DNA of 64,000 nucleotides, from the NCBI RefSeq assembly GCF_002571385.2, contig NW_019217788.1:1768866-1832865 (forward strand), in the 5' to 3' direction. The position numbers were made by a program, and so were the translations under genes. Numbering within the stretch: the stretch's first letter is position 1; every line of letters starts with the position of its first letter. The notes beneath the pieces were generated by a model, which saw only the letters and a program-made list of their open reading frames with translations, was not told the origin of the DNA and ran no database searches. Shown here in pieces: positions 8,651 to 31,031 of the stretch. The DNA is from Stylophora pistillata (Eukaryota).

Positions 8651-9433
8651 TATGTGCGTATGCCCTTTTATATGCCCTTTTATTTGCTGTAGAGGCAATC
8701 CTATATATCATGTCTTGGCTTGTCTGAATAAGGTAACCAAGTCCTAGCTGTGAGAAGAATGGGGACAGAGGGAGTTGTTTAGGAAGAATATTACACTTTC
8801 GACTTTCGTATTCTTTGCGATGCTACCAATCGAGATTCTCGTAAGCGGTTGTTTCCAACTTAACAGTGAAAGGATATTTCTTGTGAGGTGTGAAGCCATT
8901 TTTCAAACTGGTAAGTAAATTGCTGTGAACTTTGGCTTCTTAAAGATAGCGAACTGTGGGCATGTAAACTAAAAATATAGTGACAATTCAGTAAGGATTT
9001 CAGACCGTGTTTTGACTTCGAATCCCATCTCGGTTTAGTCGTTTAGAGTTTGAACAAAGTCATAGCTTTATAATTAAGCATAGTTTTAATTCAGTCGTGT
9101 CAGTGTGTCCGACACATACAGAGCCGTTGTAACACAAATATTTGCTCCTCTCTAGTTTTTATTCTGTAAGATTAACGCATGATATTCATCATATATGGCT
9201 TCGTTTTAGCGTCAAAATATGAAACTTTTGATCGACCATTTATGTTCCTAATTAGTAATATAGCCGAAGGATTTTGTACCATGCTTAAGTGTCTCCTGCT
9301 TTTATTTCGTTGCCTTGTTTGTGGTTTGATGTTAAGAGAATAGAAGGTGAATCACACAGCTAGTCACAAGTAATAAATCTATTCTGTTGAAATTGAATTG
9401 ATGGAAAGTCTAATATATACTGTTTTGGCTCTC

Positions 9434-9480
9434 TATTTCCGCGCTCACTTTCGGTAATATTAAGGGACTTTCCCCAGGAA
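9434..9480 (+). promoter_or_regulatory. NF-kB site GGGACTTTCC (9464-9473) with adjacent IRF-like motif, upstream of HEPN-STAND copy 1
   Basis: Exact canonical kB decamer. The same block recurs at 21890 and 29490 upstream of the paralogues. Confidence 0.7.
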
Positions 9481-10461
9481 TCTTACACTTTTATGAAATG
9501 TTCGATCAGTGACCTTATCCTAACTTTTGTCGGCCGGAAATAATGGAAATTTATGTGAATTTGATAATATACTCAAGAAATATAGTAGCCAACTCTGGAA
9601 ATCTTTGCTCTTCTTTCACGAGGGGAATAAGTCATAACGCGTTTAGAATTGAGATGATTTGTTGTTGACCTACGGTAATGATTTATGTTCCCTGCAGAAG
9701 GAAATAAGCTTCAAATTGTTTAAGCTACGCCGAAAATGTCGGTAAAACTTATTAATTCTCTGCTGATATCACGAGAAATGGGTGGTGCATTTTAAATCCA
9801 AAATTTGTTGCTCAGTAAACTTAATATTTCGTGACATTGCAATGAAGTATTGTTCGGACTTAAATCGACGCTGAGGACTACGGGAAATTGTTCATGTAAC
9901 AAAGAGAGCGGTTGTACTTTTTGTTTTGTTTTCTCTTATTTGGTTTTGTTTATCTCTAATTGTGCAGAGACAGTAAATACCGAGTGTAAGCTAGAATGCC
10001 AAGAGCCTAGTAGCCTCACCAGCCGTGCTTTAGGATTTACGCATTGCTCCTTTAGCTGAGCAGGGGCGTTGCGTGACATTCCAAATACGAGCTGCCCGCC
10101 ATTCGCCCTTGCTCTGGCGAATGACCAACGCTCGAAACGTTGGCAGGATTGGTTATTTCCAGGTCCTCCTAAGATCTTCAAAAGCTTCGCCCCGAAGGGA
10201 AAGAGAAAGAAGCAACAAAATTAAATTTATCGTAGAGATACTTAAAGTTCGTTGGAAAATTTTCAATAGTTAAAGTATTTAAGGTTGTCTCTCCCGGATT
10301 GATTGGTAGTGTTTCGTTTTAGAGCTTTCTTTGGACGTCATCAAAACTTCCTTTTCTTTTCAGATACAAGCCTTAGTAAACTGAATATGCTTTGGATAGA
10401 CTGACATGATGTAAACAAGATTATGGGTTGTTAGCTGAATATATGCGCCGAATTCCTTGCT

Positions 10462-29229: not shown

Positions 29230-29465
29230 TTAAACAATCAACTACAATATTCAGGTGGCGAAAACTGATGACTACCCTTTGTTTGTCACAATGAGACCCC
29301 CCCTTTGAAAAATCTTGGCACAGCTTTTGCGCCCGGGCGCTTATTCGAGGAAATAAGGTCAATATCACAAGTTTTTCACGACCATGACTATGACTAAACA
29401 ACGTAACAAAATTTTCCTTTATTTTTTTTGCGAAATTTACTTAGTTTATTGGTGTATTAGATACC

Positions 29466-29510
29466 TATTTCCGCTTTCGGTTATGAGTTGGGACTTTCCC
29501 TAGAAATTCT
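29466..29510 (+). promoter_or_regulatory. IRF/Ets-like TTTCCGCTTTCGG plus NF-kB GGGACTTTCC (29490-29499) upstream of HEPN-STAND copy 3
   Basis: Exact kB decamer in the third copy of the conserved block. It overlaps TTCCCTAGAA (TTC-N4-GAA, STAT-like). Confidence 0.7.
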
Positions 29511-31031
29511 ATACCATTCTGGAACATTCGATCAATAACCTCATCCCAAATGGTAGTTGCAGTAAATAAATGGAAATTAGAGTGAAAATCGCAACATCTT
29601 TGAGAAATATTATATGCTGCAATTTAAAGGTTTGCTAGCTTTCACGAGGGGAATGTTATGAAAGGGTAGTTAACCAAACTTATTGACCGCATTGTGTGAT
29701 CATTCCCATAGGAAGTTAATAGCTTCAAATTTCAAACTTCCGCCTTAAACGTGATCTGAAATTTTAGGTAGAACTTAATGATTCTCTGGGAAAAATGTGT
29801 ACATCGTACATTTTGCACTTAACGCCCGTATAACTTAATATTTCGTGACAATTTGATTTATGCGAAGTGACGTCATTAAATTGATTCCATTCATCAAAGC
29901 GAGGCTTGTAGTTTGATAGTTGTAGTTAACCCACCGGGGAGAGTTAGCTGCTAGAATGTTGATATCTTACTTAAAATGCCTTACTGGTGCATCGCCTAAG
30001 CGTGTAAAAAAATCTTCCGAAAAGGGGTGTAACCCACCGTGGCATCGGAAATACACTCTGTTTAGCATGAAATATTTTTGCTCCCAATTTTGTTCAAACT
30101 CATAATTAAAATGAAAGTTATACCTGAGGCACTGTCATGCAAGTCTTGTAGAGGTACTTGGCTCCCTAAAATAAATGCAAATAATACCGTTGAAAAAAAA
30201 AAAAGAACCCAAGGTAAAATGCTAAACACTTGGAGGGAATTTGAGGTCCCTAACGAGAATTGTATTTATCTACGACGAGTTCCATGGAAGGCAAGGGGGG
30301 AGGGGAAGGAGGTGGGAATTTCGGCGGGGGCACCGCACCGCACCCCTCTTCTTTTCTTTTACTTTTTTAAAAGTTTTGTGACCAAACGCCTTTCGATTAG
30401 AGTATAATGGATCAATTTCTTTTTCTAAGGCTTTTCCCCTTTCGGAAGCAGTTTGTGTGAATAAAGATACACAATCAAATTTGAAAATTTGTAATTTTAA
30501 AGAAGCTCAGTGCTGTTCAAACAATGTTATTTACCTAAATTGGCATTAAACGCCTGATGTAACAGACTAGACATGCAATCCTTTTTTTTCGGAAATGATG
30601 AGGAGTACTGGACACGAATATTGTCCTATGGTTTGTCTTGATGTTCCAGCACAGTTAAGAGTGGGTGTAGTGGGGAAGGGGATAAAGGGCGAGGCGGGAG
30701 CCTCGCCTCCTTTCCACAACCTCGGATTTCTCTGGGTCCAACCTACTTCGTGGTCGGATGCCTTATTAACTGAGCTACGAAGAAACTCAGCTCGGCTAGA
30801 CTAGACTCAAACTTAAGAAAGGTGTTTGGTATTTATCACGAATGTGGAGCAACGAAGAAGTCGAAGTTTCCCCGCCAATGACTCTAAGCAAGAATATTGT
30901 TGTAATCATTTCATCGCTTCTAACCTTACTACTGTCCGTGTTTTGATTTCCGGTAAACTCAGGAATGATGTCAACAATATTGCAGCGCCCAATAAACGAC
31001 TTGTAAGGTATCCAGCGAGTCGGAATTCGAA

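What the first reader, a model, noticed from the sequence alone, without database searches (positions are those of the whole stretch)
9420..29850. A perfect NF-kB site is retained upstream of all three HEPN-STAND genes
A non-coding block of about 350 bp recurs at about 9420-9780, 21850-22200 and 29450-29790. Its flanks carry many substitutions and indels, yet GGGACTTTCC is exact at 9464, 21890 and 29490. Each time it sits just 3' of CTTTCGGT (an IRF half-site; copies 2 and 3 read GAAAGCGGAA on the minus strand, an IRF-Ets composite). The block probably lies in the 5'-UTR intron (candidate donors 8911 and 21773; acceptors 10363, 22810, 31628). Established: cnidarians have NF-kB, IRFs and STING, and 2'3'-cGAMP induces NF-kB-dependent genes in Nematostella. 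Inference: the array is an NF-kB/IRF-inducible output, possibly downstream of cGLR signalling.
Basis: partly seen in the sequence, partly recalled or inferred. Interest (0 to 1): 0.75.

Follow-up and report, generated by a model that had tools for sequence, protein, structure and literature searches.

The report
Conserved kappaB-type site in coral NLR introns
Three neighbouring immune-receptor-like genes of the coral Stylophora pistillata share a short non-coding block in their first intron that keeps a perfect NF-kappaB-type binding word, a plausible but still unproven switch for turning these genes on.

Summary
GGGACTTTCC is exact at 9464, 21890 and 29490 (3 found, 0.05 expected). It sits in a ~360-bp block found only upstream of the ATG exons of three tandem DZIP3-HEPN/STAND/TPR genes of Stylophora pistillata. 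RNA contigs from three runs prove that copy 1 lies in a GT-AG 5'-UTR intron (8911-10362).

Taken whole, the block drifts at the synonymous rate of the adjacent exon. Block identity is 62/62/78%; synonymous-site identity is 59/63/79%. Inside it, four or five short islands are perfect in all copies, more than chance gives (P about 0.001-0.004). The kappaB word is only one of them. The conserved unit is the 11-mer GGGACTTTCCC, the 11-bp layout preferred by p50 homodimers.

Genome-wide, this 11-mer is 1.9 times as frequent as its reversed control. It forms homotypic clusters and is invariant in a second, unrelated tandem array.

Against: 27 more distant paralogs and one metagenomic relative lack it, gene 3 carries a stop codon, no ortholog DNA could be reached, and inducibility is untested. 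The IRF-Ets composite reading fails the canonical patterns.

Verdict: a probable intronic cis-regulatory module with a kappaB-type site (about 0.5). The cGLR link is speculation.

The parts
7228..8502 (+). Mab-21 (cGLR-like) ORF directly upstream. Its 3' end is continuous with exon 1 of gene 1 in RNA contigs.
   Evidence: Pfam Mab-21 and Mab-21_C. Best PDB sequence match is 8gjy 'cGAS-like receptor 1', E 1.4e-17. The X5 contig runs 8282-8909 and is joined to 10363-10520.
8534..8910 (+). Non-coding exon 1 of gene 1. This is its minimum extent; the 5' end is not determined.
   Evidence: RNA contigs X1 8534-8909 and X5 8282-8909 are spliced to 10363. The X1 contig starts inside a 10-nt tandem repeat, so its start is not a mapped TSS.
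8911..10362 (+). Intron 1 (5'-UTR intron) of gene 1, GT..AG. It contains block copy 1.
   Evidence: The joint 8909/8910 to 10363 is seen in X1, X5 and X7.
9414..9775 (+). Block copy 1
   Evidence: Alignments A1 and A4 and the profile hit. Low-depth RNA contigs lie at 9410-9641 (X7) and 9503-9741 (X1).
9464..9474 (+). kappaB-type 11-mer GGGACTTTCCC, copy 1
9434..9455 (+). TATTTCCG, then a 6-nt insertion, then CTTTCGGT. The two words are contiguous in copies 2 and 3.
9542..9551 (+). Conserved island AATGGAAATT. In copies 2 and 3 it is at 21969 and 29569.
9707..9717 (+). Conserved island AGCTTCAAATT. In copies 2 and 3 it is at 22133 and 29721.
10363..11562 (+). Exon 2 of gene 1: 99-nt 5'-UTR, ATG at 10462, HEPN domain and coiled coil.
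   Evidence: Joints at 10363 and at 11562/11957. ORFs. The RNA contigs carry 5 extra letters after 11093 compared with the assembly.
11957..15287 (+). Exon 3 of gene 1: P-loop STAND NTPase and TPR.
   Evidence: It is 100% identical to NCBI LOC111327429 of Stylophora pistillata.
21840..22205 (+). Block copy 2, with the kappaB 11-mer at 21890-21900.
22866..27514 (+). Gene 2 coding region (HEPN, STAND, TPR ORFs).
29440..29800 (+). Block copy 3, with the kappaB 11-mer at 29490-29500.
31684..36496 (+). Gene 3 coding region. It has an in-frame TAG at 31909-31911 and an N gap at 32919-33520.

Best explanation
The three exact sites are copies by descent of one site. That site belongs to a 5' cassette (a short pre-block stretch, the ~360-bp block, and the HEPN-coding exon) shared by three tandem DZIP3-HEPN/STAND/TPR NLR-like genes of Stylophora pistillata. 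The block lies in the first, 5'-UTR intron; this is shown for gene 1 and inferred for genes 2 and 3. Most of the block is free to drift. Four or five short words at fixed spacing are held constant, which is the pattern expected of a small cis-regulatory module. One of these words is the 11-bp GGGACTTTCCC, with a G-triplet and a C-triplet 11 bp apart. This is the layout that p50-type NF-kB homodimers prefer. I infer that the coral's single Rel-homology protein binds it, together with unidentified factors on the neighbouring islands, and raises transcription of these genes from within the intron. Shown here: the sequence, the intron position, the patchy conservation, and the genome-wide excess of the 11-mer. 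Inferred: binding, direction of effect, inducibility, and any upstream pathway.
For: The motif occurs 3 times against 0.05 expected. The block is not a dispersed repeat: a search of the own genome with copy 2 finds only copies 2 and 3, and the profile finds only the three copies. The intron is proven by GT-AG joints in 3 RNA runs. Conserved islands: 3 runs of 10 or more identical columns. Column shuffles reach this in 0 of 20,000, in 0.12% of shuffles with gaps removed, and in 0.39% when stratified by CpG. Each of the five island words occurs 3 times in the 64-kb window, only in the blocks. Spacings are 16 nt (all three copies), 78/79/79 nt and 243/243/231 nt. The 3' half of intron 1 in gene 1 has no homology to that of gene 2 (z 0.1), while the block has z 33-36. 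Genome-wide, GGGACTTTCCC is found 187 times, against 97 for the reversed control and 45 for a composition-matched scramble. Of the 466 10-mers, 40% are followed by C, against 19% in the control. Homotypic clusters exist: 4 kappaB-type sites within about 70 nt at L036 and 2 sites 19 nt apart at L037. In a second tandem array, of TMEM121-family genes, AGGGACTTTCCC is invariant in 4 of 4 copies although the flanks have diverged. The genome has one RHD locus. Literature (passages read): cnidarian NF-kB proteins have site specificity similar to other NF-kBs by protein-binding microarray, and coral NF-kB has the p100/p105-like RHD-GRR-ANK build (PMC13042239). p50 homodimers prefer 11-bp spacing (PMC10527052).
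Against: Block identity (0.62, 0.62, 0.785) equals synonymous-site identity of the adjacent exon (0.59, 0.63, 0.79), so there is no overall constraint. A single conserved 10-mer arises by chance in 25-35% of shuffles. In the pairwise c1-c2 comparison the excess of islands is only P 0.02. The three copies amount to about two independent lineages, and gene 3 has an in-frame stop. None of 27 more distant paralog loci has the exact word or the block in 37,064 nt of upstream DNA. Two of the 27 have some GGGRNNYYCC, and none has GGGRNNNYCCC. The one metagenomic relative, L035, has no kappaB consensus anywhere in 8,621 nt. The general class GGGRNNNYCCC is not enriched: 5,705 against 8,101 for the reversed control. 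The site lies at least 930 nt downstream of the 5'-most transcribed base seen for gene 1. There are no binding, chromatin or induction data. Gene 1 is expressed in all 4 runs laid.
Confidence: 0.5

Rival explanations
1. Passive retention. The site was present by chance in the ancestral intron and has simply not yet been hit by mutation in the three young copies. It has no function.
For: The block's average divergence equals the synonymous divergence. c2 and c3 are only 21% apart, and their homology continues at 72-77% through the rest of the intron. At least one conserved 10-mer appears in 25-35% of shuffles. Gene 3 looks like a pseudogene yet keeps the site. Wider paralogs and L035 lack it. 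The scan looked at very many windows, so some chance cases are expected.
Against: Three or four islands together are improbable (P 0.00005 to 0.004). The chance that one of so few islands matches GGGRNNYYCC is about 10 tests at 1/8192 each (my arithmetic). The 11-mer is over-represented in the genome, clusters homotypically, and is invariant in an unrelated array.
Confidence: 0.3
2. The block is itself transcribed, either as an alternative or ancestral first exon with its promoter, or as an enhancer RNA unit. The islands would then reflect promoter or exon signals rather than an intronic enhancer.
For: Low-depth RNA contigs lie on the block in two studies: X7 at 9410-9641 and X1 at 9503-9741. 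The rest of the intron, 9758-10348, has zero depth in all four runs. The X1 contig ends one base before a GT that is present in all three copies. c2-c3 homology starts exactly at the block's 5' edge, so the duplicated unit began there. An AATAAA at 9372 could end the upstream Mab-21 transcript just before the block.
Against: No joint from the block to exon 2 was reported. Depth is about 2. X7 also has declining intronic coverage from the donor onwards, which fits unspliced RNA. The X7 contig starts upstream of the kappaB word, which would put the site inside the transcript. The GT alone is not significant.
Confidence: 0.1
3. The word is functional but is read by a factor other than NF-kB.
For: No binding data exist. 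The neighbouring islands match no motif that I could assign. The broader kappaB class is not enriched in the genome.
Against: It is an exact match to the classical site, with the extra C that fits 11-bp p50 spacing. Tandem arrays of the same and of variant kappaB words occur at L036.
Confidence: 0.08
4. The block is a transposon remnant or a structured non-coding RNA hosted in the intron.
For: It is a repeated non-coding block within a tandem array.
Against: The genome holds only the local copies. No Rfam match falls in the blocks at E up to 1. The RNAalifold covariation term is unfavourable, +2.34.
Confidence: 0.02

Closest known systems
Classical kappaB site GGGACTTTCC of the mouse Ig-kappa intronic enhancer and the HIV-1 LTR (recalled, not from a call)
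   Same: The 10-mer is identical. As in the Ig-kappa case, it lies in an intron downstream of the promoter.
   Different: The host is a coral, and the conserved unit is 11 bp (with an added 3' C). There is a single site per gene, not a tandem pair. No binding or activity data exist.
11-bp p50-homodimer sites such as MHC-I and IL-6 kappaB DNA (PMC10527052, passages read)
   Same: A G-triplet and a C-triplet lie 11 bp apart. Coral NF-kB is of the p100/p105 type (PMC13042239).
   Different: Binding by the coral protein to this word was not tested.
Predicted NF-kB sites near stress- or cGAMP-induced genes in Exaiptasia and Nematostella (PMC13042239; PMC8713801; passages read)
   Same: These are cnidarian defence-type genes with kappaB-type words nearby.
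   Different: Those predictions are tied to expression or knock-down data and to proximal promoters. Here the site is intronic, there are no expression data, and the gene family is different.
DZIP3-like-HEPN N-termini on NACHT/NB-ARC-TPR proteins expanded in corals and oysters (PMC10236652; PMC9646362; passages read)
   Same: The domain order is the same, the Rx4H motif is present, and the genes stand in tandem arrays.
   Different: Those papers do not describe regulatory elements. One of them states that gene conversion is very rare in corals, whereas this cluster has a young 5' cassette on old 3' parts.
ISRE and Ets-IRF composite element (consensus patterns recalled)
   Same: GAAA and GGAA cores are present next to the kappaB word.
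   Different: Order and spacing do not fit (GAAA-N3-GAAA, and no GGAANNGAAA), and the element is split by 6 nt in copy 1.

Membership tests
kappaB (NF-kB/Rel) response element | Match to the consensus GGGRNWYYCC (consensus recalled) | tested here: met
   Exact GGGACTTTCC in 3 of 3 copies. The extension to GGGACTTTCCC is also in 3 of 3.
kappaB (NF-kB/Rel) response element | A Rel-homology transcription factor is encoded by the organism | tested here: met
   PF00554 matches at one locus, G000:C125, two exons, 110.6 and 48 bits.
kappaB (NF-kB/Rel) response element | The site is conserved beyond neutral expectation | tested here: inconclusive
   It is one of 3-4 islands, jointly P 0.00005-0.004. 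A single island arises by chance in 25-35% of shuffles. Only about two independent lineages are compared. Ortholog DNA could not be reached.
kappaB (NF-kB/Rel) response element | Bound by NF-kB and needed for NF-kB-dependent transcription | not testable with these tools
   This needs EMSA or PBM, ChIP, and a reporter or knock-down.
ISRE / Ets-IRF composite element | GAAANNGAAA or GGAANNGAAA at the conserved spot (patterns recalled) | tested here: not met
   GGAANNGAAA has no hits in any of the three upstream regions. The element reads GAAAGCGGAAA (N3) in copies 2 and 3, and it is interrupted in copy 1.
Intronic enhancer in a 5'-UTR intron | It lies inside a spliced intron upstream of the start codon | tested here: met
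   Gene 1: the joint 8910 to 10363 is seen in 3 runs, and the ATG is at 10462. Genes 2 and 3 have splice-site-like sequences only.
Intronic enhancer in a 5'-UTR intron | Enhancer activity or open chromatin | not testable with these tools
   No chromatin or reporter data are at hand.
DZIP3-like HEPN / STAND / TPR NLR-like genes | HEPN domain with the Rx4-6H motif | tested here: met
   R144 and N145 are invariant and H149 is at 90% or more in 16 family N-termini. PF18738 is matched by 12 of 16 at E up to 0.01, best 9.9e-6. No E-value is strong, and the one bit score seen, for the gene 2 ORF, is below Pfam's cut-off (17.5 against 27). The PDB profile search gave nothing significant.
DZIP3-like HEPN / STAND / TPR NLR-like genes | P-loop STAND NTPase followed by TPR repeats | tested here: met
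   Gene 1 matches AAA_22, AAA, NACHT (28.9 bits against a cut-off of 26.7) and TPR_12 (E 2e-55). Gene 2 matches AAA-type P-loop families and TPR_12.
Dispersed repeat / transposon | Many copies elsewhere in the genome | tested here: not met
   Only the local copies were found.
Structured non-coding RNA | Rfam match or covarying helices | tested here: not met
   No Rfam hit falls in the blocks. The covariation term is +2.34.

The most novel reading that the evidence does not exclude
GGGACTTTCCC is the preferred word of the coral's single p50-like NF-kB and marks an inducible regulon of lineage-specific tandem arrays (HEPN-NLR-like genes here, TMEM121-like genes on another contig, and others). 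In this cluster the site travels together with the HEPN effector exon as one 5' cassette that has been copied or converted onto old, divergent STAND-TPR sensor parts. Regulation and effector would then be exchanged as a unit, while the sensors diversify.
Probability: 0.25. Interest if true: 0.65.

Novelty: new member of a known kind. Interest (0 to 1): 0.38.

Why it matters
Corals have hundreds of NLR-like genes, 42 cGLRs and 7 STINGs, but almost nothing is known about how any of them are switched on. A defined 11-bp word, with a specific intron to mutate and a short list of other loci that carry the same word, would give coral immunologists a concrete handle. They could run EMSA, reporter and ATAC experiments, and could predict an NF-kB regulon in a reef-building species. 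The mosaic age of the genes (a young HEPN cassette on old sensors) also bears on how such receptor families evolve. Without binding or induction data it remains a well-founded prediction.

Tried and rejected
Transposon origin was rejected: the own genome holds only the local copies.

Structured RNA or snoRNA was rejected: no Rfam hit, and no covariation.

The IRF-Ets composite and the ISRE were rejected on canonical spacing.

A general kappaB signature of the whole HEPN family was rejected. None of 27 paralog loci has the word or the block. Those loci reach only 238-1,503 nt upstream. Gene 3's own block, 2.2 kb upstream of its ATG, shows that such a reach can miss a site.

Cross-species footprinting could not be done. 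The single metagenome scan returned one relative, L035. It is not a 1:1 ortholog, since its STAND part is only 42-49% identical, and it lacks the block.

The PDB profile search gave nothing significant, and the Atlas was unavailable.

The genes next to the homotypic kappaB clusters at L036 and L037 could not be named from ORFs.

Two paper searches gave 0 papers: the motif together with 'cnidarian', and LOC111327429.

I did not open any supplements. Three sets may bear on this report. Tables S1 and S5 of 10.1101/2023.02.22.529553 may say whether the Mab-21 ORF here is one of the 42 listed cGLRs. The datasets of PMC8713801 may list NLR-like genes among the cGAMP-induced genes. The additional files of PMC10236652 list the domain compositions.

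The spliced gene models were searched exon by exon only. The step of joining the exons was left out.
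Full report
**What is there.** The window is G000:C5:1768866-1832865 of a 397.6-Mb genome. The genome is that of Stylophora pistillata: the 1,080-aa exon-3 ORF of gene 1 is 100% identical to NCBI 'uncharacterized protein LOC111327429 [Stylophora pistillata]'.

GGGACTTTCC occurs three times in the window, at 9464, 21890 and 29490, all on the + strand. Shuffles give 0.05, and 0 of 100 shuffles reach 3. 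Each site sits in a ~360-bp non-coding block. A profile built from the three copies finds only 9403-9773, 21825-22209 and 29431-29803 in the window. A search of the whole genome with copy 2 finds only copies 2 and 3, so the block is local and not a dispersed repeat.

**The genes.** Each block lies upstream of an ATG exon; the ATGs are at 10462, 22866 and 31684. The three paralogs have the same build:
- An N-terminal domain with an invariant RN and a nearly invariant H four residues on, which is the HEPN Rx4H motif.
- A coiled coil.
- A P-loop STAND NTPase. In gene 1 the NACHT match scores 28.9 bits against a cut-off of 26.7.
- TPR repeats, with TPR_12 at E 2e-55.

Twelve of 16 family N-termini match PF18738 (HEPN_DZIP3) at E up to 0.01, the best at 9.9e-6. 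No E-value is strong, and the one bit score seen, for the gene 2 ORF, is below Pfam's cut-off (17.5 against 27). This architecture is described for corals and oysters (PMC10236652 and PMC9646362, passages read). A Mab-21 (cGLR-like) ORF ends at 8502, directly upstream.

**Position of the block.** I laid Logan contigs of three runs and raw reads of one run on 7000-12900. A GT..AG joint from 8909/8910 to 10363 is present in X1, X5 and X7. Block copy 1 therefore lies inside intron 1 (8911-10362), and that is a 5'-UTR intron because the ATG is at 10462.
- The upstream exon reaches back to at least 8534 (X1). In X5 it is continuous with the Mab-21 ORF from 8282.
- A contig does not prove one molecule. 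The X1 contig starts inside a 10-nt tandem repeat. The start of gene 1 is therefore not mapped.
- A second intron, 11563-11956, is also supported.
- For genes 2 and 3 only splice-site-like sequences exist: GT at 21773, and AG at 22808-22809 and 31626-31627.

**Is the motif more conserved than its flanks?** Over 375 core columns, 47% are identical in all three copies. Pairwise identity is 0.623 (c1-c2), 0.619 (c1-c3) and 0.785 (c2-c3). The adjacent HEPN exon has synonymous differences of 0.408, 0.372 and 0.212 (Nei-Gojobori). That gives neutral identities of 0.59, 0.63 and 0.79. The block as a whole therefore drifts at the neutral rate.

Within the block, the following words are perfect in all three copies:
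- GGGACTTTCCC (11 nt)
- AGCTTCAAATT (11 nt)
- AATGGAAATT (10 nt)
- TATTTCCG (8 nt)
- CTTTCGGT (8 nt)

Each of these words occurs exactly three times in the 64-kb window, only in the blocks. The spacings are nearly fixed: 16 nt in all three copies from CTTTCGGT to the kappaB word, 78/79/79 nt to AATGGAAATT, and 243/243/231 nt to AGCTTCAAATT.

The shuffle tests gave the following:
- Three runs of 10 or more were reached in 0 of 20,000 column shuffles.
- The same was reached in 0.12% of shuffles after removing gap columns, and in 0.39% when CpG columns were shuffled separately.
- A single run of 10 or more arises in 25-35% of shuffles.
- In the c1-c2 pair alone the excess is P 0.02.

So the motif is more conserved than its flanks, but it is one of several such islands. 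The evidence for constraint rests on the set of islands, not on this one word.

**How independent are the three copies?** They are not very independent. The HEPN exon is 82-90% identical, with dS of 0.25-0.59. The STAND exon is saturated (dS about 3) and only 40-46% identical at the protein level. The three genes thus share a young 5' cassette on old 3' parts.
- c2-c3 homology begins exactly at the block's 5' edge (21834/29432). It continues through the rest of the intron at 72-77%, with two large insertions in c3.
- c1-c2 homology covers 9175-9771, that is the block plus about 240 nt before it. In a global alignment the pre-block stretch has z 9.5 and the block z 35.8.
- The remaining 590 nt of the c1 intron has no similarity to c2 (z 0.1) and is unique in the genome.
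- Gene 3 has an in-frame TAG at codon 76.

In effect the comparison is between c1 and the c2/c3 pair.

**The wider family.** The genome has at least 51 matches to the HEPN exon, and 30 loci were fetched. Among the 27 loci outside the window (37,064 nt of upstream DNA, 238-1,503 nt each):
- 0 have the exact word.
- 2 have some GGGRNNYYCC.
- 0 have GGGRNNNYCCC, against 0.53 expected from genome density.
- 0 match the block profile at E below 1.

The metagenome scan matched 92 stretches to its peptide patterns, of which 1 encoded a relative, L035. L035 is 68-71% identical in the HEPN exon and 42-49% in the STAND part. It has no block and no kappaB consensus in its 8,621 nt. The element is therefore specific to this three-gene cassette as far as I could test.

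**Is the word meaningful in this genome?** The counts are these:

| Word | Count | Reversed control |
|---|---|---|
| GGGACTTTCC (10-mer) | 466 | 518 |
| GGGACTTTCCC (11-mer) | 187 | 97 |
| GGGTTCATCCC (scramble with the same ends) | 45 | 50 |
| GGGRNNNYCCC (class) | 5,705 | 8,101 |

- The 10-mer is not enriched, but the 11-mer is 1.9 times as frequent as its control.
- The scramble is a composition-matched word of my own making.
- Of the 10-mers, 40% are followed by C, against 19% in the control.
- The broad class is not enriched, so the excess is specific to this word.

The 11-mer also forms homotypic clusters. At L036 four kappaB-type words lie within about 70 nt, and at L037 two lie 19 nt apart. 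In a tandem array of four TMEM121/CECR6-family genes on another contig, AGGGACTTTCCC and a nearby TTTCYTAGAAAT are invariant in 4 of 4 copies, although one copy no longer aligns to the others by BLAST.

The genome has one RHD locus and five IRF loci. From the literature I read passages only. Cnidarian NF-kB proteins bind much the same sites as other NF-kBs in protein-binding microarrays, and coral NF-kB has the p100/p105-like build (PMC13042239). p50 homodimers prefer 11-bp spacing between the G-triplets (PMC10527052). The conserved 11-bp unit fits that preference.

**The IRF reading.** CTTTCGGT is conserved at a fixed distance from the kappaB word. However, the canonical Ets-IRF composite (GGAANNGAAA) is absent from all three upstream regions. 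The minus strand of copies 2 and 3 reads GAAA-N3-GAAA, not the ISRE N2 spacing. In copy 1 the two halves are separated by a 6-nt insertion. The consensus patterns are recalled from memory. In Nematostella, single IRF knock-downs did not change the cGAMP response, whereas NF-kB had a role (PMC8713801, passages read).

**Expression.** Twenty listed runs from 7 studies hold the stretch, and 4 of them are on record as RNA. Gene 1 exons are covered in all 4 runs laid, so gene 1 has baseline expression. Inducibility is unknown.

Low-depth contigs lie on the block itself (X7 at 9410-9641 and X1 at 9503-9741), while 9758-10348 has no depth in any run. This could be an alternative exon, an enhancer RNA or unspliced background, and it stays unexplained.

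No Rfam family matches the blocks, and there is no covariation support for an RNA structure.

**Verdict.** The most likely reading (about 0.5) is a small intronic cis-regulatory module whose kappaB-type 11-mer is bound by the coral NF-kB. Passive retention in a young duplicated cassette remains a serious rival (about 0.3). The links to IRF and to cGLR signalling are not supported by anything tested here. I did not test it.

Noticed in passing
window 10462-11148 versus 12045-15287, and the matching parts of genes 2 and 3: The genes have a mosaic age. The HEPN exon has dS of 0.25-0.59 among the three genes. The STAND-TPR exon is saturated (dS about 3; 40-46% protein identity). A young 5' cassette sits on old 3' parts, which points to gene conversion or cassette exchange. 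A coral genome paper calls gene conversion very rare in corals.
   Followed up: partly
window 11093: RNA contigs of three runs carry 5 extra letters after 11093 compared with the assembly. In the window this shifts the frame of gene 1 between the HEPN and coiled-coil parts. It is either an assembly error or an allele.
   Followed up: no
window 31909-31911 and 32133-33820: Gene 3 has an in-frame TAG at codon 76. The N gap at 32919-33520 is flanked by 100% identical stretches (32133-32432 equals 33521-33820), which suggests an assembly duplication around the gap.
   Followed up: partly
window 8902 to 11958: In run X7 a joint links exon 1 directly to exon 3 (depth 18), skipping the ATG/HEPN exon. 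This may be an isoform without the effector domain. Alternative donors at 11393 and 11454 also appear.
   Followed up: no
window 7228-8910: The Mab-21 (cGLR-like) ORF ends 32 nt before the first base seen for exon 1 of gene 1, and in X5 one contig runs from the ORF into the spliced exon 2. In a weak alignment to 8gjy, the first catalytic acidic position reads R.
   Followed up: partly
window about 8521-8648: About a dozen tandem 10-nt units of the type CGTGGTCAYT lie just after the Mab-21 stop, inside exon 1. Run X7 lacks one unit (10 letters left out at 8593).
   Followed up: no
window 8797-8811: The tandem ACTTTCGACTTTCG reads GAAAGTCGAAA on the minus strand, with N3 spacing. It lies inside the transcribed exon 1, not upstream of it.
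   Followed up: partly
window 9410-9741: Low-depth RNA contigs from two studies fall on the block only. The rest of the intron downstream has no depth. The X1 contig ends one base before a GT shared by all three copies.
   Followed up: partly
L033 2759 and 5604; L034 2098 and 6283 (G000:C58:598758-612292): A tandem array of four TMEM121/CECR6-family genes. Each copy has invariant AGGGACTTTCCC, followed after a short, variable spacer (about 18-29 nt, longest in copy c; A2) by invariant TTTCYTAGAAAT, in otherwise diverged upstream DNA.
   Followed up: partly
L036 about 3905-3975 (G000:C93:~500429); L037 3886-3915 (G000:C180:~499885): These are homotypic clusters of kappaB-type words: GGGACTTTTCCC, GGGACTTTCCCC, GGGACTTTCCC and GGGAAATTTCCC within about 70 nt at L036, and two GGGACTTTCCC 19 nt apart at L037. 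The neighbouring genes were not identified.
   Followed up: partly
window 16362-16530 and 28800-29022: Hairpin-like elements give plant-miRNA Rfam hits below the gathering scores on both strands. They are probably MITE-type inverted repeats.
   Followed up: no
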